Source: Malacoraja senta
Taxonomy: Eukaryota
DNA: 64,000 nt
Direction: 5' to 3'
NCBI GenBank assembly: GCA_038087875.1
Contig: CM075980.1
Location: 11,842,001 to 11,906,000, forward strand
Shown: in pieces, positions 3,740 through 61,260 of the stretch
Layout of the letters: each line of letters opens with the position of its first letter
Numbering within the stretch: position 1 is the first letter of the stretch
Program-made: the position numbers and the translations under genes
The notes under the pieces: model-generated
Database searches by the model: none
What the model saw: only the letters and a program-made list of their open reading frames with translations
What the model was told of the DNA's origin: nothing

Positions 3740-5866
3740 GTATGTGATTTAAAATGACCGTTCTCCACCCCTCCTACATGCTTACTGCTTAGTATGCAAA
3801 TGGTCAGCTCTCCGTTAGAGTTGTATGGTTTGGTCTCCGTTCACATTTGTCTCTGCATATTACAGCATACCACTCGCTAGTGGTGGTAGATGTTCTGGAA
3901 ATGATTGAAGCTGGGAGATGGGCAGGCAGCATATTCAGTTTACAGCTCTCAAAGCAAAATGGCAGTGTTCTGAGGGGTTCTCGGAAAGTCCTAATCCAGC
4001 ATTGTGGTGGCATTCACATCCTCCACTGAAATAACTAATGTCAACTATTTTGTCATAGAGCTGTACAGCGCAGAAACCACATTGACCAGCCAGCGAAGTT
4101 AGGATTACTGGACTAGCTCCCTATTCCTGCATTTGGCCCATAGACGAGTGAAAAAGTTGCCCCTGGGATCCTTCTTAAATCTCGCCCCTCTCACCTTAAG
4201 CTTATGCCATCTAGTGTTAGAAACCTCTACCTTGGGGAAATCCATGCCGCTCATGATCTTGTACACCTCAATAATGTCACTCCTGGGCCTCCTACAATCC
4301 AAAGAAAAAAGCAGAGGACCAAGACTCGTCATCAGACCTCAAGCTCGGTCTTGGTCTTTACATTGCAGATGCAGGTGTGGAAGCCAGGGGCAAGCTGATC
4401 TACACACAGCATATCTTCAGAACCACCAGCTGGTCAACAGCATGATTCAACACATTTGCACAAGATGACCCTCATCAAGGTTTCTTTAATCAACACAAAA
4501 TGCTGGAGTAACTCAGCGGGTCAGGCAACATCTCTGGAGAAAAGGAATAGGTGACATTTTGGGACTGAAAGGTAGAGAAAGCCAGAACAAAGCAGGGCCG
4601 GCAACAGATGACCTCAGGAAGGGTGGAGCCCATAATGGCCCATTGGTGGCTTGGGAAGATATACTAACGAGAGGAATACGGAATACAAGGATGTGAACAG
4701 TGGAGCCAGTAGGACGACTGTGTGGGGGGGGGGAGAAGCCAGGTTTACTTTCAACACTCAAAATAGAACAACAAGCCATTTATTTAATGCTCTTTGTTTA
4801 AATATTGTGCCTGTCATGTAGAGTGAACATGCTTACTGCTACAGACAGTTACTTCAGAGAGGATCTGTCAAGAAGAGCTGTGTGCACATAGTCTTGGCTT
4901 TGATCAGTTTAAGGTGATTAGCTCTTGTGAGCTCTTGAGTTAGACTATTTTTAGTGTTGCGGACCTGCTGTTGTGCTGATACATCAATATGCTCTTGTTA
5001 TTTTATATTAATATGTAACACATTAACCCATTGTTTTCTTGTAAGTGTAAACCTTGTGCAGCCACATAATTCTGTCATTATTTTTCTCATGTTTCTGTTT
5101 ATCCCACATTTATCTGATGCCCTTAGTTGCGTTCTTTGCATTCAGTTCATCTCACCGTCTGGCTCGGTGTTTAAACTTACCATTTCTTCGCACGGTTTGT
5201 AAGCTTAGACAGATTATAACATCAGAGAAACAGCTTGTATTAGTGCTAAGAATGTCAGAGACCTTACTCAGCGCTTCTCGGTCGTGGTCTTTATGCTAAT
5301 CCTTTGTCTACATGCCTCGCCTCAAAAACCTTTTGGTATAGTCTTGCAACTTTTCATCAGGACAGACATTTAGACTGCATTATTTTGCCCTTTGGATTGT
5401 CTCCATTGTGTTTGCTCCTTTGAGAACTCCAAAGGCAATAAGCTTTATTATCTTGAACTGCAAGCACACAAAGAATCATGAATACTAGCCATTCCTGAGG
5501 ATTAGCCTTGTGAAGCTTTATCTTCAGCTTTTTGCTTCCGTTTTATCTGAGCCAACCTTATTGTGTTACACGTATGCTCCATCTTGGACTCGCTGTGTGC
5601 ATGTTTCCATGTTTGTCCCTAATGTGTAGGATAATGCTAGTGTACAGGGTGATTGCTAGTCGGCGCCGACTCAATGGGCCAAAGGGCCTGTTTCCATGCT
5701 GTATCTCTAAAAGACGAAACAAGCCCTGTGAAAGCAGTGACCATACTTAAGACTGATTAATTGCCTGTAAAGTACCCAATGAAAGGTGCCATCTTGAGAG
5801 TCTATCTGTATTTAATGATCTCCAACTGGTGGATTCTCAGTGTGTTTTTCCTCTCTTGTCCCGCAG

Positions 5867-5964
5867 CAGTCCCTGGAACGCCGCAGTTTGTGGATGAACA
5901 ATTCCTGTCTCGTCTTTTCCTCTTCGTGGCTCTTGTAATTATGTTTTGGCTCCTCATTGCCTAA
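5867..5964 (+). CDS. RNF185: RNF185 last coding exon (C-terminal TM helix, stop)
   Basis: Polypyrimidine tract plus ccgcag|CA GTC. Translates (A)[31 protein letters not shown]. Phase 1 fits the previous exon. Confidence 0.96.
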
Positions 5965-20632: not shown

Positions 20633-20840
20633 TCAAGCCCCAGGAGTGCCAGTGGCGGTTGCACGAGAACTGTCCGCCTCACGGTCTTCCCCGGTCAGTG
20701 CCTGAGGGTTCACCATCATCACCATCACCTCGTCCTCCAGCTCACAGCTGGGTTGGTGAAGGCCCGACAACGGCAGCATGATTCGCTGGATCTCTTGTTC
20801 ACGTGCTCGCTGCTCCTGTTCCTTCTTTATAGCTTGTCCT
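20633..20840 (-). CDS. PIK3IP1: PIK3IP1 last exon (cytoplasmic p85-like region, ends GTPGA*)
   Basis: ttgcag|A GGA. Translates GQAIKKEQEQRAREQEIQRIMLPLSGLHQPSCEL...TGTPGA*, compared with human REMQRITLPLSAFTNPTCE...AGTPGA. Confidence 0.93.
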
Positions 20841-22300: not shown

Positions 22301-22379
22301 CGTTTGTAGATGTAGCCCACTGTGATGCCAGAACCCAAAAATATGATGATGACAATCATTCCAATCGCCATAGCCTGAC
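22301..22379 (-). CDS. PIK3IP1: PIK3IP1 transmembrane exon (79 bp)
   Basis: cctag|GT...AAACG|gtaag. Translates GQAMAIGMIVIIIFLGSGITVGYIYKR, compared with human GYVLGITMMVIIIAIGAGIILGYSYKR. Confidence 0.94.
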
Positions 22380-25433: not shown

Positions 25434-25628
25434 CTAGAACTCCAAGGTCCCGTTTCCGCTTGGCAGACTGCCTCACGGGCGAGGTACCACCACTGACCGG
25501 TCGCTGGACGCCGGGCTCACGGCCAGAGAGCGGCTTCACCTGCTCGTCGATCTGAGCCACACTCACTCCAGGCTCCACCGTTTCCGGCACCCTGGTCGTC
25601 TCATTGTGGTCTTCGTTCACAGATGCCC
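25434..25628 (-). CDS. PIK3IP1: PIK3IP1 extracellular stalk exon (195 bp, phase 1-1)
   Basis: gtcag|GG...CTAG|gtaca. Ends VQRPVSGGTSPVRQSAKRKRDLGVL, compared with human VQPVIGISQRVRMNSKEKKDLGTL. Confidence 0.9.
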
Positions 25629-26202
25629 CTGACGCAAATGCAAGCCAGAGGAGTGGGTGAGCAGGCATTGAATACATCTCGGCTTGTATTTCCAAACCTA
25701 ACACTTCCATTATATAACTATTTAATCTCCATTCTACAAGATCATTCCATGCATCCTACCATGGGAATATAACCTTTTAGCTGAAGTACAAGTCTGGTGA
25801 ATCCACAGTGCTTGATCCAATGCTCCTACCCTCTTTATCACTATAATACCCAGACCTCAACACTATCCAAACTGGATCCAAGCAGATGTTTATAAAACTG
25901 AAACATAACTAAACCATGTCCCGTTTCAATTCCATGCTTCTATTTATTAATAAAAGCTGTACATGATTTCTGTTCATAGGCCTCTAAGCATTTCCATTAT
26001 TCCACAGTTCTAGGCTTCCCATCATTTAAATGATAGTCAAATACCTTTCTGTGTGTCCTATATATTCACTATCACCAGGACTGTCCAACCCTATTAAGTC
26101 TCCAATCTCTAACATCTTCTTTCCAATACCCATTATTTTCACCTCTGACATCTGATTCCTGTCCGTGTGTCCACTAGTGTCTTCTCTACACTCTGACATT
26201 AC

Positions 26203-26310
26203 CTTGCCGTTACAGCGAACGTTCAGAGATGCCCAACAGAAACTCTAGCTCACTTCCAGTCAGCGCCATCTAAAGCCCAACCCTAGCGTTTGTGGTCCCA
26301 GTCTGCGACA
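26203..26310 (-). pseudogene. Possible decayed PIK3IP1 exon 3 (second half of kringle)
   Basis: Minus strand TGTCGCAGACTGGGAC...GGTTGG-GCTTT resembles CRNPD...PWCY with indels. It ends AACGTTCGCTGT...AAG|gtaat, has stops in all three frames, and abuts a SINE at its 5' side. Confidence 0.4.
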
Positions 26311-26321
26311 CTTTAGGCTAA

Positions 26322-27540
26322 CACTTTAGAGATACAGCGCAGAAACAGGCCCTTTGGCCCATGGAATCCGCACCGACCAGTAAATCACCCCGTACACTAG
26401 CACTATCCTACACACTAGGGACAATTTACAATTTTTACCAAAGCCAAAAGTACGTCTTTGGAGTGTGGGAGGAAACCGGAGCTCTTGGTGCAAACCCATG
26501 TGGTCACAGGGAGAACGTACATGATTGGCTGCTCTAATGGTTAGAATGCATGGGATCCAGGAAGAGCTAGCTAACGAGACACGGAATTGGCTTCATGGTA
26601 GGAAGGTGAAAAGGTGATGGTAGAAGGTTTTTTGAATTGGAGGCCTGTGTCTAGTGGCATGTCTCAAGGATCGGTACGGGGCCCATTGCTGTTTGTCATC
26701 TGTATTAATGATGTCAATGGGAGTATTCAAGGTATGATTAATAATTTTGCAGATGACATCAAAATAGGTGATACCACAGACAGATGGTTATCAATAATCA
26801 CAGTGGGATCTTGATCAGCTAGACAGGTGGAATGAGAAATGGCAAATGGAGTTTAATTCAGATAAATATGAGGAGTTACATTTTGGAAAACATACCTGGG
26901 CAGGATCTTCACAGTAAAGGGCAGGGCCCTGGGGAGTGTTGTAGAACAGACGGATGTGGGGGTACTAACATTAAATTCCCTGAAAATGTCATCGCAGGTA
27001 GATGGGGGGGGTGAAGAAGGCTTTTGACATGCTGGCCTTCGTCAGTTGAAGAATTGAGTATACAGGTTTAGATGTTATGTTACAGTTGTACAAGACTTGA
27101 GGCCACATGTGGAATATTGTGTTCAGTTTTGGTCACCCTGCTATAGGAAAGATGCCATTAAGCTGGAGAGAGTGCGGAGAAGATATACGAGGATTTTGCC
27201 AAAACCCAAGGGACTGAGCTATAGGGAGGTTGGGAATGCTGGGACTTAATTCCTTGGAATGCAGGGGGCTGAGAAGTGATCTTATAGAGCTATATAAAAT
27301 GAGGGGAATAGAGAGGGTGAATGCACGCAGTCCTTTTTTCCCAGGGTAGGGGAATGATAAACTAGAGAGCATAGGTTTAAGGGGTGGGGGTGAGAATAGT
27401 TGAGGCAGCTGCATAACAACAGTTAAGACTTTTGGACGTACATGGATCTGGAGGGATATGCACCAGGTGATGGTAAATGGGACTAACTTAGGTGGGACCT
27501 CTTCTTTGACCTGCACCAGTTGTATGACTCCATGATTCTA
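26322..27540. mobile_element. SINE 3' half (-) fused to a CR1 RT/3' fragment (+)
   Basis: SINE at 26322-26521. CR1 WRPVSSGMSQGSVRGPLLFVICIND..FADD from ~26614. Confidence 0.75.
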
Positions 27541-27708
27541 CTCTTGGCTACATCCTCAAATCTGTGTACCACCTACCACTCAAAAAAATCCCCGTCTCTT
27601 TACATCACCCTTCATAAAATGAAATGCCCCCATTTATGTAATCTCTGACCCGGCAGAAAATGTCCATCTGCATCAGTGGCAATGTGCATACAATTTTATA
27701 CCATCTCT

Positions 27709-27920
27709 NNNNNNNNNNNNNNNNNNNNNNNNNNNNNNNNNNNNNNNNNNNNNNNNNNNNNNNNNNNNNNNNNNNNNNNNNNNNNNNNNNNNNNNNNNNN
27801 NNNNNNNNNNNNNNNNNNNNNNNNNNNNNNNNNNNNNNNNNNNNNNNNNNNNNNNNNNNNNNNNNNNNNNNNNNNNNNNNNNNNNNNNNNNNNNNNNNNN
27901 NNNNNNNNNNNNNNNNNNNN
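27709..27920. other. Assembly gap (212 N) followed by a C/T-rich low-complexity tract
   Basis: Run of N, then a polypyrimidine tract at 27921-28035. Confidence 0.99.
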
Positions 27921-28039
27921 TCTCCCCACCTACCCCCTTTTCCCTTCCTCTCCCCTCCCGACTCTACCCCCCTCCTCTCCCTCTATCCCCTTGCTCCCCC
28001 ACTCCTCACCTCCCCCTTTCCCACCCTCCCCCACAATGA

Positions 28040-28900
28040 AAATCGTGTTGTTTAATTTTTTTTTTTTAATCTCAATGAAAATCACATTTTTTCTTTAATA
28101 TAACCCAAACATCCAAACATAGTGTTATCTGTTAATGAAAACCAAAGAAATTGATTTAAACTTTTTTTTGAAAATCGCGATTTTTTAATGTAAATGAGAT
28201 TCAAGATCCCATTGTGACGTCGAACACGGCAAGTGGAAAAGTGGTTTGAAAAGTGATTTTTATAAAGTTTAAAATGTCAATAACTTGTAAAATATACCAT
28301 CAATCTGAACAAAACTTGTTTCATTTACATCACAGGACAATGGTGAGTAAGGTGGGCCAAATATTGTAGCGCTATCGTGTACCGTTTTTGGCGGGTTTTG
28401 GGATATCAAGCACACGCATACAAACAAACAGAGTTTTAGTAATATACTAGATTAAGAATAACCCGCGGAGGGGGCGGGGGTTTGAATAACCCCGGGGGGG
28501 GGGAATAACCCGTGGGGGGGGGCACTCTGCAGCTTTGGGAGCCCACTGTGATTATCATCACTGGAAGATCCTGGAAAAAAAGTTGTCCGTGAGAAGCTGC
28601 TGTTACCGTTGGCAACGTCCCATTGTGATGTCATTGGCACTCGGCAGCTTGAGAGTCCATTGTGATTGGTGCACTGTGAGTGGCATTGTGACATCATCAG
28701 TGGAAAGTCCTGGAGAAAGGCTGTGTGTGAGAACCGGTTTTTTACCTTTTCTTAAAACTTCAATCGTCAATAACTCGCAAAATATAGGATGAAATCTTAA
28801 GTGAACCTGATTACTGCGTGGAGGGGGAAATGCGAGTCAGAATATGTAAAAACGTAACTGCTACCGCGTAGTGTTTTGGCGCACGTGCACACACACACAC
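28040..28900 (+). repeat. Two diverged tandem units of a non-autonomous DNA element (possibly Helitron/Helentron-like)
   Basis: Similar motifs recur: gtcaataacttgtaaaatata / gtcaaataactcgcaaaatata and gctatcgtgtaccgtttttgg / gctaccgcgtagtgttttgg. Junction ...aatatactag at ~28450. Confidence 0.35.
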
Positions 28901-28915
28901 AGTGACACCCAATAC

Positions 28916-29038
28916 CTGTGCTGTTTTGGGACAGAGTCAAGTTGAAATCCTTTTTGCTTTCCACCAAGTTCGTACAATTTACTCCTGATGTAATACGCTG
29001 CTCAGCTCTTAAATCTGTTCCATTGGAAGGTACACATT
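28916..29038 (-). CDS. PIK3IP1: PIK3IP1 exon 2, degenerate first half of kringle (123 bp, phase 1-1)
   Basis: ttgcag|AA TGT...ACAG|gtatt. Translates (E)CVPSNGTDLRAEQRITSGVNCTNLVESKKDFNLTLSQNST, compared with kringle CxxxNGxxYRGxxxxTxxGxxCxxW. Confidence 0.82.
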
Positions 29039-29899
29039 CTGCAACAAATTAACACAGAAAATGATGAGCAATTACAGCATGGGGAGGGGAGGGGGCGGAG
29101 GGTCATAGACCTTGGGGAAGAGACGGTGGAAATGTGTGGGAGAGGAAGAGACAGGAGGGAAAGTCGAAGCAAAGGCCCGAGGGAGTTGAGAGAGGGTTAG
29201 GATGACGATGGGATAGGAGGAGAGGGGGCATGGGATGCGGCAAAGTAGGAGTGCAAAGAGTGGTGGTGAGGTCGGATGGGAGGCATCAATGATGAGGAAG
29301 GGTCTGATGGAGAGTTTTGGATGTTATGGAGAGTTGTGATTTGTTGGTGGGGAAGGAGAGAGTTGTGATTAGTAGGTAAGAAACAATTGGTGAATGGGAG
29401 CAGGAGAAAGTACGTGGTGTGTATTGACAGTGGAGATTGAATGATTGCTCTGTCTCCCCTCTCCCAACCTCACCTGCACCATAACTGTAAGATATTACAA
29501 CTTCAGCACGTAGATAGAAGCAAGCACAGGTTGTCAGTACACGCTGTTGCTCTATATTTCACAAAAGTACACTGCACATACTCACACATATTCACGAGAC
29601 TGATACGATATTGAATATATCACATGACACAAATCATGCCATTCTAGTACTCAGTACTTAAAGTTAGTTACCATTATATACACTACAATAACGTTGCTCC
29701 CTCCCCTCTCTCCCACACCACCTGCCTCCCCTTCCCCTCCAGCTTGCCCCTCCGACCCCCACCCCTCCTCGCATCCCCCAACCCTCTCCTTCCCCCCCCT
29801 CCCGCCTCTACTCTACTCCCCCCCTCCCCGCCTCTACTCCCCCCCTTCTTTCTTCCACCCCCTTCATTCTCTCTCCCCCCCTCCCCTCCCCCTCCCCCC

Positions 29900-30560
29900 T
29901 ACGGGGCCTCGCGGCTTTTCCCTGGTCGCGGGGCAGCTCCAACCACCGACAGCAAGTGTAGGAGCAGCGCTGCCAGCTTGAGGCCCGGGAGGGTGACGCC
30001 GACGCCGCGGTCCCCGTTCCCCCGGGTGGTGCTGGTGCTGGTGCCGCGGTCCCCCATCCCCCGGGAGCCGCCGCTGGGATCCATTGCAACTTGTAAACAA
30101 CCTCGCTCCTACATCAACATCTCTCTCCGCCCAATCAGGACACAAAGTACAGCAACCAACCAGCAATCTCCGCCCAGCAGCCAATCCAAACCCTGACCCG
30201 GAGATGAATGACCAATCCCGAGACACAGTCTCGGCCCGACAACCAATCGCAAGCTCGTGTCACGCAACTAAGTCACGAGCGGGACTCTGCGCCCAGCAAC
30301 CAATGGGAGCGCGGACTCTGCGCTCAGCAACTAATCCCAGCCGGGACTCTGCGCTCAGCAACAATCACAGCCGGGACTCTGCGCCCAGCAACCAATGGGA
30401 ACGCCCGCGCCGAGCTGAGCGGAGACACAAGGTGGGGCGTGCAGTAAATAACAAAGGCCGGGAACCTCAGCGGGCCGGGCCGGGCAGCGTCTGTAGAGGG
30501 ATAAGTTCGTCCAGTACTTTGATTTTTAATGTCAAGCCCGGTGACCCGCACTCAGACCCA
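29900..30560. promoter_or_regulatory. CpG island / PIK3IP1 promoter with CCAAT-box array and forkhead motif
   Basis: High CpG density. CCAAT at ~30131, 30181, 30212, 30243, 30300 and 30392, partly within a ~30-bp tandem repeat (gggactctgcgc[c/t]cagcaac). GTAAACAA at 30093-30100 and a GC-box-like ggggcgtg near 30434. Confidence 0.75.
29922..30084 (-). CDS. PIK3IP1: PIK3IP1 exon 1 (ATG, signal peptide); donor uncertain
   Basis: ATG at 30084 in a CpG island. Signal-like LKLAALLLHLLSVVGAAPRP. The required phase-1 donor position reads CCAG|GGAAAA, which is non-canonical. Confidence 0.65.
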
Positions 30561-34117: not shown

Positions 34118-35817
34118 CTGAAAACAAAAGACATTTCATTTGTTATCGCACAACAAAATACTGGCCGGAGAGAGACTTTTGCAGGGCTTCTGGTGGTCTC
34201 TGGAGCAGCTAGATTGTGCTCCCATTTTTCAGGTTGAGGACATTGCCCATCCCTACTTGCTTCAAAGGTGAACTGTCTCCTTAAATATTTCTGGTGACGT
34301 ACTCACTTCCACACCGTTGGCGTGGGACATTCAGTATTTGGACCAAGCCATGGGGGAAGTTTGGGCAGGGAGAATGGTGAAATATTTCCAAATTAGGACA
34401 GGAATCTGTAGGATGTGCACCCTTCTTGGTGTTCATAGCAAAGGACACAGCTTCTGAAGGTGCGGTCAGAGTTAACACAACAATGTTGTAAACAGTCTTA
34501 ACATTCTTAGAGATAGCAATTGTTGACTTGGCCTGGTGTCAGCTCTTCCATGCAGTAAAATCACAGTTGGGGAAAAGCAGTAAACACAGTTCTTTCCTTT
34601 ATTTCTAAAACTCTCCCCAATGGAATACAACTTCCCACACTCAAGTCCTCGAACCCAGTATTTAACCCGGTGGGAACCGATCATACATTCTGCCTTGTTG
34701 TGGAGGGTGGCAAGCTTGTTAGATATTGCCATTCCATCCAGGCCACAATTACCCTGAAGGGCCCTGATCCGAAACATTACCTATCAACATTCTCCAGAGA
34801 GGCTGCCGGACACACTGAGTTACTCAGCACTTTGTCTGTTTTGTGTTAACTAGCATCAGTAGTTCCTTGTTTCCACAGGCTAGAATTATGCTGGGTTAAT
34901 ACTGATCAGACATGTAACTGTACCAACCTTACCACCGGGTGGCACCACCATCATGGCAGCCTCGCCAACAGTCTGTGTGTCCTACTGTTTTTATTATTTT
35001 ACGTTTGTTTAAACAGTTGTATTTATTTTATGTGTTTATTGTGTTCTTTTCACTTAGTATGGCTGTATGGTAACTCAAATTTTACTGTACCATAGTTGGT
35101 TAAGTGACAATAAACGCAAACTTGAACTTATACATATGGAGCAACAGAGGTTGGGTATCCCATCCAAAACCATCTTCCAAACTTATAACCTTACAACCTA
35201 GTAGAGAAAGGGAAGGGAAGACCATTACCTGCAGGTCTCCCTCTTGGTTGCAGAGTATCCTGAAACTTGCCACTTAACAGGAATGTGTGAATACCTTCAA
35301 ATTCTGCAGCGTTTCACGGGAGAGGCTCATAACCACCTTCCCAAGGACAACTAGGGATAAACTGTAGGTGCAAGGAATTGCAGATGATGGAATCCTGAGC
35401 AAAACATAGTGCTGGATTAACTCAGTGGGTTAGGCAACATCTGTGGAGAGAATGGACAGATGACATTTTGGGTTGGGACCCCTCTTCAGAGTTATTGTAC
35501 TGGGGCAGGGGGTTATACTTTGCCAGCAGGAACTACATGAATAGATCCAGTATGAAGAAATGTGCCATATCTTTCTAGCATACCATAGTCCAGGAGATTG
35601 GACCACCAGATCTTCAAAATCATTGTCACCACAGAATTCCCCCACTCTAATTCCACGATTTGACTCGTGCTCTGAACCATACTTGCCTAATCTCTTTAGC
35701 TACCTTTTACAGATAATGACGCTATGATAGAAGGATAAGAACCTTGTACCATCCTACTCAGAATCATCATGTTATGATAATATCATGCTACAGAGAGATG
35801 GTGTAAGTTGGACCCAC

Positions 35818-36057
35818 CTGGGCTTACACAAAGCATGCTGTTTGAATTGATGGATGCCTCATACGGAGGGGGTGGATCATCAGGATGCTGAATGTCTGGG
35901 TATTTATAAGCCGTGTATGGAGGTGGGGGATCGTGGAAATGGAATGCTCCTCCCTCACCATCGTCAGAGAGATGCAGAGGAGTTAGGCCTGATCCAAGGC
36001 TATCTGGACCATAATCAAAGCCTGGCATTCTGCTTCGGGCGAGGTTAAAATGATGCA
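35818..36057 (-). CDS. DGCR2: DGCR2 exon, cytoplasmic PPPY motifs (240 bp)
   Basis: [61 protein letters not shown]. Canonical ag/gt. Confidence 0.97.
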
Positions 36058-37544
36058 CTGTGAAAGAAAACCAGAAAAATCAGCTGCAAATACTAGACCA
36101 GATTCAGTGCCAGCAAATGGCTACCAACTCCACATAGAACAGCTAACAAACCCCAACGTTTCCCTTTCATGCTGCTTTATGTGAAAATAGCCCCCCATTC
36201 CCCCATTTCCAATGTTCCCAGCTTAACTCCTCATTCCTCCACCAACTCCACTGTCCCTGGTTCCACTGCCCGTCCCCTTCACCCCTCCACTATCCCAGGT
36301 CCCCTTCACCAGCCCTCTCACCCAGATCAAGTTATAACAGGTACAGATTTCAGAGGTCTGACTCAAATAACCTTGTTGGACAAGAGGAAGTTGTCTCACA
36401 GAAAATTTGTATTTACACTGAAACTTGAACACGAATCGGTCCCAAACCTTCAGGAAATTTAGCAAAGAAAATTTGACAATGACTACATATTGAGGAACCA
36501 ATTGAGGTGATCAATAGACTGGTCTAATGATAAGTTTCAAGATGTATCCTAAAATAAAATACAGGGAACAGGCCAAGGACTTTGGAGCACTAAAGCCAAG
36601 AAAAACACAACGAAGAGGCGTAACAAAGTCTGGATCCAAACTGGCTCAGCAAATAAAAATCGTGCAGTTTTAACTCAGAACAAATCTCAAGGTGTCTCCA
36701 ACAAAATATGGGAACAATCCCAATGGAAAAGTAGAGCTTAGTTGATAGGATATATACAACAAATGGTTCAGGAATAGAGTCCCAGAGTGAACGAGCAATG
36801 GACTACTGGTCCTCTTGAACCTGCTCTGTCATTCAGTAACATCCCAGCTACCTCACCACCACTTTCCTGCAGTAACTCCACATCCCTCAAATCACTTAAT
36901 ATTCAAAAATCAACCATTCCCATCTTGAATACACTCAGCAACTACGTTTCCTCTTCCCCTGAGGAGTGAATTTTAAAGATCATATATTTTCCAGGTGAAA
37001 TAATTTCTCCTCATTTCTATCCCGAATGCTGACCCTGTACTCTGAGACAGACACTGAGCTAGGGGAAACAGCATTACTGCTGCTTCATAAGAAACGGCAA
37101 GCTTCATAAAAATGCTTGAGATCACCTCTCACTCTTCGAAACTCCAGGGAGTAGAGCCAGACTTCTCAATCTCACCTTTAATGACAAATCTGCCTTCCAG
37201 GAATCAATTTGGTGAATCTTTGCTAATGTTGTTATCTTTCCTTAAGTAATGAGACCAGACATACACAAAATATTCCACATGTGATCTCACTAGGGTCTGA
37301 CACAGCTGGAAGAAAACTTCCACCCTTGAAAATAAATCCTCTAAACCTCTAAAGGCCAATATATTGTTTAGCTTCCTAATTATGTGCTGAACATTTACCC
37401 GTTATCTTTCAGTGATAGAGTGTACAAGAACACCCAGGTCCCTGTGAACACCAACAACTTTCAACCTCGAATACTTAAAACCAATATTCTGCCTTTTCTC
37501 TATCAAAGTGGATGATCTCACTTTTCCCACACTTTCTCACATCT

Positions 37545-60302: not shown

Positions 60303-61260
60303 CAATAGACAATAGACAATAGGTGCAGGAGTAGGCCATTTGGCCCTTCGAGCCAGCACCGCCATTCAATGTGATCATGGCTGATCATCCCCAATCAGTA
60401 CCCCGTTCCTGCCTGCTCCCCATATCCCGTGACTCCACTATTTTTAAGAGCCCTATCTAGCTTTCTCTTGAAAGCATCCAGAGAACCTGCCTCCACCGCC
60501 CTCTGAGGCAGAGAATTCCACAGACTCACCACTCTCTGTGAGAAAAGGTGTTTCCTCGTCTCCGTTCTAAATGGCTTACTCCTTATTCTTAAACTGTGGC
60601 CCCTGGTTCTGGACTCCCTCAATAGTAAGAATGTCCTTCCTCAAATTAGGGGACCAAAACTGCACACAATACTCCAGGTGTGGTCTCACTAGGGCTCTGT
60701 ACAACTGCAGAAGGACCTCTTTGCTCCTATATTCGATTCCTCTTGTTATAAAGGCCAACATGCCATTTGCTTTCTTCACTGCCTGCTGTACCGGCATGCT
60801 TACTTTCATAGACTGATGTACAAAGACCCCCAGATCCCATTGTACTTCCCCTTTTCCCAACTTGACACCATTTAGATAGTAATCTGCCTTCCTGTTTTTG
60901 CTACCAAAGTGGATAACCTCACATTTATCCGCATTAAACTTAATCTGCCATGCATCTGCCCACTCCCCCAACCTGTCCAAGTCACCCTGCATTCTCACAG
61001 CATCCTCCTCACAGTTCACACTGCCACCCAGCTTTGTGTCATCTGCAAATTTGCTAATGTTACTTTGAATCCCTTCATCCAAATCATTGATGTATATTGT
61101 AAATAGCTGCGGACCTAGCACCGAGCCTTGCGGTACCCCACTGGTCACTGCCTGCCATTCTGAAAGGGACCCGTTAATCCCTACTCTTTGTTTCCTGTCT
61201 GCCAACCACTTCTCTATCCATGTCAGTACTCTACCCCAATACCATGTGCCCTAATTTTGT
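60303..61260 (-). mobile_element. CR1 3' fragment with internal deletion
   Basis: VTSGVPQGSVLGPQLFTIYIND..FADDTKLGG, a jump to the 3' end near 60620, and a (ctattgt)n tail. Confidence 0.88.

What the first reader, a model, noticed from the sequence alone, without database searches (positions are those of the whole stretch)
25434..30084. PIK3IP1 appears to have shed its kringle domain while keeping TM and PI3K-inhibitory tail
Seen: exon 2 is open and spliceable, but the kringle signature is eroded (YRG to LRA, conserved W to L) and it carries several N-x-S/T sequons (NGT, NCT, NLT, NST). No intact exon 3 (CRNPD..PWCY) is visible. The best candidate, 26203-26310, has indels and stops and is cut by a SINE. 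Exons 2 and 4 are both phase 1, so direct joining stays in frame and gives a ~255-aa protein. The TM exon and cytoplasmic REQEIQRIMLPLS..GTPGA are intact. Inference: a naturally kringle-less PIK3IP1/TrIP, informative about whether the ectodomain is dispensable.
Basis: partly seen in the sequence, partly recalled or inferred. Interest (0 to 1): 0.7.

Follow-up and report, generated by a model that had tools for sequence, protein, structure and literature searches.

The report
Skates and rays lost half PIK3IP1's kringle
This skate's PIK3IP1 gene, a membrane-bound brake on PI3K signalling, really lacks the exon for the second half of its outer kringle domain, and so do all ten other skate and ray species checked, whereas mouse experiments found that domain necessary.

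Summary
Observation confirmed and widened. PIK3IP1 lies on the minus strand (ATG 30084, stop 20633): five open exons and a 255-aa product. Exon 2 (first kringle half) joins exon 4 in phase.

The missing kringle exon 3 is not an artefact of the 212-N gap:
- Ten other batoid species from four orders have gene models with the same exon 2-to-4 join and no Pfam kringle.
- Four gap-free batoid loci hold no trace of exon 3, at protein or DNA level.
- Two spliced RNA contigs from a Leucoraja-like skate carry the junction.
- In sharks, exon 3 sits about 100 nt after exon 2. The window's gap is about 1 kb away, inside a repeat-rich segment that Rhinoraja lacks.

Sharks, chimaera, coelacanth and bony fish keep the full kringle. 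One loss in the batoid stem is the simplest reading.

The remaining 41-aa half keeps both cysteines and three or four N-glycan sites. It is under purifying selection (dN/dS about 0.2 between skates and sawfish).

In this assembly the gene also shows two unverified lesions. The intron-1 GT donor is lost. A +1/-1 frameshift pair rewrites the invariant tail motif SAFTN to SGLHQ.

Many squamate reptile gene models are also kringle-less.

The parts
29922..30084 (-). PIK3IP1 exon 1 CDS. It begins at the ATG at 30084 and encodes the N-terminal region and signal peptide (LKLAALLLHLLSVVGAAPRP). The last base is the first base of a split codon (phase 1). The expected GT donor at 29921-29920 reads GG.
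   Evidence: All six other elasmobranch loci have G|gt here. The window lacks the t.
30109..30111 (-). In-frame stop. It closes the upstream ATGs that other batoid gene models use as start (MLMQERGCLQVAM...).
   Evidence: tblastn of the Leucoraja protein shows MLM* in the window.
28916..29038 (-). Exon 2, the first half of the former kringle. It encodes 41 aa with both cysteines (C1, C2) and the sequons NGT, NCT, NLT and NST. Phase is 1 to 1, with a canonical ag acceptor and gt donor.
   Evidence: It matches shark exon 2 DNA at about 68-71% identity. dN/dS is 0.13-0.57 among batoids.
27709..27920 (.). Assembly gap (212 N) inside the exon 2 to exon 4 intron. It is about 1 kb downstream of exon 2.
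   Evidence: The flanks align to Leucoraja L001, leaving about 195 nt unaccounted for. The whole block 28904-27218 is absent from Rhinoraja, whose gene has the same exon 2 to 4 structure.
26203..26310 (-). It is not supported and is ordinary intron at the edge of a repeat.
   Evidence: The HMM score is at noise level, there is no DNA match to shark exon 3, and the position is wrong relative to shark gene structure.
25434..25628 (-). Exon 4, the extracellular stalk (GASVNEDHNETT...RKRDLGVLG). It is phase 1 at its start and joins exon 2 in frame.
22301..22379 (-). Transmembrane exon (QAMAIGMIVIIIFLGSGITVGYIYK).
20633..20840 (-). Last coding exon, the cytoplasmic p85-like tail ending GTPGA, plus the stop codon. 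It has an open frame.
20750..20764 (-). A +G and -C pair, 17 nt apart, that shifts the frame over four codons. The invariant motif SAFTN becomes SGLHQ.
   Evidence: nucleotide alignment of nine sequences. (A225, F226 and N228 are invariant in 18 species). Not verified with reads.

Best explanation
This is the skate orthologue of PIK3IP1 (TrIP).

Shown: the 41-codon exon 3 of the ancestral gene is absent from the genome of every batoid sampled. That exon encoded the second half of the kringle, with four of its six cysteines and the CRNPD...PWC core. It is flanked by phase-1 introns, so exon 2 splices straight to exon 4 without a frameshift. The product has a signal peptide, a 41-residue remnant of the first kringle half, the stalk, one membrane helix and the p85-like cytoplasmic tail. 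A kringle fold cannot form.

Shown: the remnant has not decayed. Its two cysteines are invariant, its N-glycan sites are kept, and dN/dS is well below 1.

Inferred: exon 3 was lost once, in the common ancestor of skates and rays.

Inferred: the remnant now serves as a small glycosylated cysteine loop, or as an inter-chain disulfide handle. The tail is inferred to restrain PI3K without a kringle, in contrast to mouse T cells.

The N gap in this window is an unresolved repeat-rich stretch of intron. It is not a hiding place for the exon.
For: Protein-level evidence:
- Gene models of Narcine, Hemitrygon, Hypanus, two Mobula species, Pristis, Leucoraja, Amblyraja and Rhinoraja all join QNxT directly to GASxNE.
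- Alignment A1 shows one clean 41-column gap in all nine batoid rows.
- Pfam finds no kringle in seven batoid proteins or in the window's exon 2, even at E<=10. Sharks match positions 1-79 of 79.

Genomic evidence:
- The Leucoraja, Pristis, Rhinoraja and Narcine loci contain no N.
- An exon-3 HMM and shark exon 2-3 DNA find only exon 2 in these loci.
- In Heptranchias and Rhincodon, exon 3 lies about 95-110 nt after exon 2.
- The window's gap lies about 1 kb away, in a block that Rhinoraja lacks. It sits next to a multi-copy repeat.

Transcript evidence:
- Logan contigs from SRR11241664 and SRR11241671 map as exon 2, exon 4, TM exon and tail, on both Leucoraja and the window.

Orthology:
- RNF185 lies downstream and a PPxY-protein gene upstream, as in the shark loci.

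Selection:
- Exon 2 dN/dS is 0.18-0.23 between skates and Pristis, Fisher p 4e-4 to 7e-4.
- C68 and C88 are invariant.

Structure:
- AlphaFold gives pLDDT below 50 for the whole ectodomain of the Leucoraja protein.
Against:
- In this assembly the intron-1 donor is GG and the tail motif is rewritten. This species' copy might be mis-assembled or decaying.
- Selection on exon 2 is weaker in comparisons with Narcine (dN/dS 0.35-0.57, p 0.04-0.08).
- The function of the remnant is inferred only.
- The AlphaFold alignment was shallow (18 sequences).
Confidence: 0.9

Rival explanations
1. Assembly artefact. An intact kringle exon 3 lies in the 212-N gap at 27709-27920, and the gene is a normal kringle-bearing PIK3IP1.
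For: The gap lies in the right intron, and a 123-nt exon would fit in it.
Against: - Four gap-free batoid loci lack the exon.
- Ten other species' models and two RNA contigs join exon 2 to exon 4.
- The orthologous Leucoraja interval, about 195 nt, has no kringle motif.
- Rhinoraja lacks the whole block around the gap.
- Shark exon 3 sits about 100 nt from exon 2, not 1 kb.
- Exon 2 already lacks the core Tyr and Trp in all batoids.
Confidence: 0.03
2. In this particular species PIK3IP1 is a young pseudogene. The lost intron-1 donor and the rewritten tail motif are real, and the gene no longer makes a working protein.
For: - The GT donor is lost by deletion of the t, and the next GT, 10 nt on, is changed to GC.
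- The +G/-C pair alters residues invariant from teleosts to sharks.
- The window does not show an excess of lineage-specific 1-nt indels that would point to a sloppy assembly: 3 in 6.2 kb against 4 in Leucoraja.
Against: - All five exons are open with no stop.
- All other splice sites are canonical.
- The second indel restores the frame exactly.
- Few other window-specific changes exist: 3 nonsynonymous and 2 synonymous.
- An in-frame GC donor 9 nt downstream could rescue splicing. This is inference.
- The lesions could not be checked against reads.
Confidence: 0.2
3. The kringle-less form is only an alternative splice product. The exon exists in batoid genomes but is usually skipped.
For: - Exon-skipping isoforms are annotated in batoids: exon 2 is skipped in Hemitrygon X2 and Rhinoraja X2.
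- Kringle-less isoforms stand beside kringle-bearing ones in turtles and crocodilians.
Against: No exon-3 sequence exists in four complete batoid loci or in the window, at protein or DNA level. No batoid model of any isoform carries it.
Confidence: 0.02

Closest known systems
PIK3IP1 / TrIP of sharks, chimaera and bony vertebrates (e.g. Rhincodon typus XP_048467237.1, Heptranchias perlo, Callorhinchus milii; mouse and human TrIP)
   Same: - It sits at the same locus, with RNF185 as neighbour.
- It has the same exon phases, signal peptide, stalk and transmembrane helix.
- It has the same cytoplasmic tail, with EREMxRIxLPLSAFxNPxCE and the C-terminal GTPGA.
- Exon 2 is recognisably homologous at DNA level, at about 68-71% identity.
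   Different: - Those proteins have a complete 79-residue kringle with six cysteines (Pfam PF00051, E 1e-14 to 1e-16).
- The batoid gene lacks the exon for its second half. It has also replaced the core Tyr and Trp of the first half.
- In mouse T cells, deletion of the kringle abolished inhibition of pS6 and stopped activation-induced shedding (PMC6279406).
Annotated batoid PIK3IP1 models (Leucoraja erinacea XP_055511980.1, Amblyraja radiata XP_032899397.1, Rhinoraja longicauda XP_078277583.1, Pristis pectinata XP_051887754.1, Hemitrygon, Hypanus, Mobula, Narcine)
   Same: They have the same five-exon structure and the same exon 2 to 4 junction. Apart from one residue (position 31: K/Q in Rhinoraja, D/E in Leucoraja), the window's exon 2 peptide is identical to those of Rhinoraja and Leucoraja.
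   Different: - The window's copy has GG at the intron-1 donor.
- It has a stop in the upstream extension.
- Its tail reads SGLHQ instead of SAFTN.
- No gene model of this exact sequence was found in the protein collections.
Kringle-less PIK3IP1 models of squamate reptiles (Podarcis, Varanus, Pogona, Paroedura, Elgaria, geckos, snakes)
   Same: They have a signal peptide, stalk, TM helix and p85-like tail with no Pfam kringle, about 178-188 aa.
   Different: - There both kringle exons are missing from the models, with no half-kringle remnant.
- Hemicordylus and tuatara keep the kringle.
- I did not inspect squamate genomes. Loss versus exon skipping is therefore open.

Membership tests
PIK3IP1 / TrIP (orthologue) | Orthologous locus (conserved neighbours) | tested here: met
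   The RNF185 last exon is at window ~5761-5961 (+), downstream and convergent, as in Narcine L004, Hemiscyllium and Rhincodon L006. A PPxY-protein exon at 35786-36079 matches Rhincodon at 93% aa identity.
PIK3IP1 / TrIP (orthologue) | N-terminal signal peptide and single transmembrane helix (type I membrane protein) | tested here: met
   The hydrophobic LKLAALLLHLLSVVGAAP and the TM exon align with all orthologues. AlphaFold helices 42-60 and 171-220 in the Leucoraja protein agree. No dedicated signal-peptide predictor was run.
PIK3IP1 / TrIP (orthologue) | Extracellular kringle domain (Pfam PF00051) | tested here: not met
   No Pfam hit at E<=10 for seven batoid proteins or for the window's exon 2, while sharks match 1-79/79. 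There is a 41-column deletion in A1.
PIK3IP1 / TrIP (orthologue) | Cytoplasmic p85-like tail with the invariant LPLSAFxNPxCE motif and C-terminal GTPGA | tested here: inconclusive
   Met in all other batoids. In the window the frame and GTPGA are kept, and phmmer finds PIK3IP1 tails (E 8e-13). But SAFTN reads SGLHQ through a +1/-1 indel pair that is unverified by reads.
PIK3IP1 / TrIP (orthologue) | Binds p110 and damps PI3K/Akt signalling | not testable with these tools
   Known for the mouse and human protein (PMC6279406, PMC11615590). No batoid data were found.
Kringle domain (PF00051) | About 80 residues with six cysteines in three disulfides (1-6, 2-4, 3-5) and the CRNPD...PWC core | tested here: not met
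   Only C1 and C2 remain. The segment holding C3 to C6 and the CRNPD/PWC core is absent from protein and genome. The disulfide pattern is from established knowledge of kringles.

The most novel reading that the evidence does not exclude
After losing the kringle fold about 200 million years ago or more, skates and rays kept the first half as a selected, heavily glycosylated two-cysteine module. Under this reading the module replaces the kringle's proposed role in clustering the protein, for instance through a disulfide-linked dimer. The p85-like tail would then still restrain PI3K. Together with kringle-less models in many squamates, this would show that the kringle is not intrinsically required for TrIP function. 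That would contradict the simplest reading of the mouse deletion experiments.
Probability: 0.3. Interest if true: 0.6.

Novelty: new variant of a known kind. Interest (0 to 1): 0.45.

Why it matters
TrIP/PIK3IP1 is studied as a brake on T-cell activation and as a possible immunotherapy target. What its kringle does is an open question. In mouse cells a kringle-deleted construct did not inhibit and was not shed (PMC6279406).

A whole vertebrate clade has lived without a foldable kringle and still conserves the stalk, the membrane helix, the tail and a two-cysteine remnant. That makes it a natural deletion series. It gives concrete constructs to test whether clustering, ligand binding or shedding is the kringle's real job.

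It is also a clean example of domain loss by removal of one symmetric-phase exon. The loss is already implicit in RefSeq models, but I found no paper describing it in the searchable library.

Tried and rejected
I therefore have no read-level check of the exon 2-4 junction, the intron-1 donor or the tail indels in this species.
- The search for homologous proteins with the 68-aa tail found no candidates, because fragments are hidden inside clusters with long representatives.
- The look-up of encoding contigs gave no DNA for Hemitrygon and Hemiscyllium (files too large) and no record for Narcine isoform X3.
- The search of earlier findings had nothing on this place.
- An apparent match between the Leucoraja intron and shark intron 3 turned out to be a multi-copy repeat, not orthologous sequence.
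- The best exon-3 HMM hit in the window, near 27120, lies in a LINE-like fragment at noise level.
From the orthologous Leucoraja interval I used only its length, composition and absence of motifs.
- The identity of the sequencing run X18 (RNA or DNA) could not be established.
Full report
**What is in the window.** The finding sits on the minus strand.
- Translating the open segments and matching them to relatives gives a five-exon PIK3IP1 gene. The exons are exon 1 at 30084-29922, exon 2 at 29038-28916, exon 4 at 25628-25434, the transmembrane exon at 22379-22301 and the tail exon at 20840-20633.
- The joined coding sequence is 768 nt, or 255 residues.
- Exon 2 ends after the first base of a codon and exon 4 starts with the last two bases. 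The direct join is therefore in frame.
These are DLRA in place of the shark NYRG, Leu in place of the kringle Trp, and four sequons.
- The only N run in the window is 27709-27920, inside the intron between exons 2 and 4.
- No C.NP, NPD or PWC motif occurs in any minus-strand frame between 20000 and 30300.

**Is the missing exon hidden in the gap?** This was the first thing to test, and five lines of evidence say no.
- *Relatives share the join.* An exhaustive search with the 68-residue tail and a follow-up search recovered PIK3IP1 from many vertebrates. Every skate, ray, sawfish and electric-ray model joins QNxT directly to GASxNE. The species are Narcine bancroftii, Hemitrygon akajei, Hypanus sabinus, Mobula hypostoma, Mobula birostris, Pristis pectinata, Leucoraja erinacea, Amblyraja radiata and Rhinoraja longicauda.
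- *Other lineages keep the kringle.* Sharks of four orders, the chimaera, the coelacanth, a gar and teleosts have a full kringle. In an 18-species alignment the nine batoid rows share one clean 41-column gap, exactly the shark exon 3. Pfam finds no kringle in seven batoid proteins or in the window's exon 2 even at E<=10. Two sharks match the model end to end.
- *Gap-free loci lack the exon.* I fetched the genomic loci of Leucoraja, Pristis, Rhinoraja and Narcine, and none contains a single N. A profile built from 32 kringle second halves finds nothing above 5 bits in six-frame translations of their exon 2-4 introns or the window's. Shark exon 2-intron-exon 3 DNA matches exon 2 in every batoid locus, at about 60-71% identity, and nothing else.
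- *The gap is in the wrong place.* In Heptranchias and Rhincodon, exon 3 lies only about 95-110 nt downstream of exon 2. The window's gap is about 1 kb downstream. It sits inside a block (28904-27218) that Rhinoraja lacks altogether, although Rhinoraja has the same gene structure.
- *The gap's flanks account for it.* They align to Leucoraja and leave about 195 nt unaccounted for. That interval has no kringle motif and sits next to a roughly 1-kb multi-copy repeat, which probably explains the gap.

**Transcript evidence.**
I could not look at RNA of the window's own species.
- The Leucoraja protein cluster holds two products from Logan assemblies of runs SRR11241664 and SRR11241671.
- Their contigs (1845 and 942 nt) map as exon 2, exon 4, TM exon and tail plus 3' UTR. 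They map this way on both the Leucoraja locus (96-99% identity) and the window.
- The exon 2 to 4 junction therefore exists in mRNA of a close relative.

**Orthology.**
- The RNF185 last exon lies downstream in convergent orientation, as in Narcine, Hemiscyllium and Rhincodon.
- A PPxY-protein exon upstream matches the Rhincodon locus at 93% identity.
- No second PIK3IP1-like gene appeared for any batoid.
- This is therefore the orthologue of the kringle-bearing shark gene, not a paralogue.

**What remains, and is it used?**
- The 41-residue remnant keeps both of its cysteines in all 18 species aligned.
- All batoids have a sequon at the N-G-T position and one at the end of the exon. The older NLT site is also kept.
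- Pairwise Nei-Gojobori estimates give exon 2 dN/dS of 0.18-0.23 between skates and sawfish at dS of about 0.6-0.7 (Fisher p 4e-4 to 7e-4). Against Narcine the values are 0.35-0.57. These are similar to the stalk, TM and tail exons, and to the shark-shark value.
- The stub is therefore under purifying selection, not drifting.
- AlphaFold on the Leucoraja protein, with a shallow alignment, predicts the signal and TM helices. It gives pLDDT below 50 for the whole ectodomain, which is consistent with no folded domain.
- In a kringle, C1 pairs with C6 and C2 with C4 (established knowledge). Both partners are gone here. I infer that the two survivors pair with each other or between chains.

**How it most likely arose and works.**
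- Shown: exon 3 is phase 1 on both sides, so its removal leaves the frame intact.
- Inferred: parsimony puts one loss in the batoid stem. Shared derived changes in exon 2 support this (Trp to Leu, Tyr to Leu or Phe, and a one-residue deletion).
- Inferred: the protein remains a type I membrane protein whose cytoplasmic tail restrains PI3K. The ectodomain is reduced to a glycosylated cysteine stub plus stalk.
- Mouse work found that both the kringle and the p85-like domain are needed. The kringle-deleted construct neither inhibited pS6 nor was shed, and a cross-linked CD8 ectodomain could substitute (PMC6279406).
- Shedding in mouse maps to the stalk (PMC11615590).
- A disulfide-capable stub replacing kringle-mediated clustering is a testable idea. 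It is not a result.

**Lesions specific to this assembly.**
- *Intron-1 donor.* It reads G|gg where six other elasmobranch loci read G|gt, because the t is missing. The next gt, 10 nt on in Leucoraja and Rhinoraja, is gc here.
- *Tail motif.* In the tail exon a +G and a -C, 17 nt apart, turn SAFTN into SGLHQ. A, F and N at these positions are invariant in all 18 aligned species.
- *Upstream stop.* A stop at 30111-30109 closes the upstream ATGs used in other models. This is harmless if translation starts at 30084.
- The window does not show more lineage-specific 1-nt indels than Leucoraja in 6.2 kb of three-way alignment. That speaks somewhat against a generally error-prone assembly.
- Everything else in the gene is open and canonically spliced.
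- I cannot decide between assembly error, tolerated change and early decay. A GC donor 9 nt downstream would keep the frame, but that is speculation.

**Comparison and novelty.**
- The protein works like PIK3IP1 and is its orthologue. It fails the kringle criterion that is usually part of the family's description.
- Full-text searches found no paper on this loss, although it is implicit in RefSeq models.
- My last protein search showed that many squamate models go from the signal peptide straight to the stalk with no kringle. These are geckos, lacertids, agamids, a skink, Varanus, Elgaria, a tegu and snakes. Hemicordylus and tuatara keep the kringle, and turtles and crocodilians have both kinds of isoform.
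- Kringle-less PIK3IP1 is thus probably not unique to batoids. This lowers the surprise and raises the generality.
- I rate it a new variant of a known kind, of moderate interest.

Noticed in passing
window 20750-20764 (minus strand, tail exon): A +G/-C compensated frameshift rewrites the invariant PIK3IP1 tail motif SAFTN to SGLHQ. It is either an assembly error or a real change in the most conserved part of the protein.
   Followed up: partly
window 29907-29922 (minus strand): The intron-1 donor reads GG instead of GT (the t is missing). The second GT seen in Leucoraja and Rhinoraja is GC here. A GC donor 9 nt downstream would be in frame.
   Followed up: partly
proteins P0082, P0106, P0089, P0080, P0148, P0010, P0011, P0022 versus P0087, P0184: Many squamate reptile PIK3IP1 models lack the whole kringle (signal peptide straight to stalk, about 180 aa). 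Hemicordylus and tuatara keep it. Turtles and crocodilians have both isoform types. This may be a parallel loss or widespread skipping of the two phase-1 kringle exons.
   Followed up: partly
proteins P0046, P0047, P0044, P0030: Batoid isoforms reduce the ectodomain further. Exon 2 is skipped in Hemitrygon X2 and Rhinoraja X2. An internal donor is used in Pristis X2. Narcine X1 has an 8-residue insertion before the TM helix.
   Followed up: no
window 5761-5961 (+) and 35786-36079 (-): The RNF185 C-terminal exon lies downstream of PIK3IP1. Upstream is a highly conserved PPxY-motif exon, 93% identical to a 165-aa Rhincodon gene. Synteny with sharks is conserved.
   Followed up: partly
window 27218-28904; L001 5549-6560; window 60305-61158: The intron block holding the gap is absent in Rhinoraja. 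In Leucoraja it adjoins a roughly 1-kb LINE-like repeat with many copies in every elasmobranch locus examined, including one further along this window.
   Followed up: partly
window 30085-30120 (minus strand): The peptide ERGCLQVAM upstream of the start is conserved across batoid models, but is closed by a stop in this window. It may be a conserved 5' leader or an upstream ORF rather than coding sequence.
   Followed up: no
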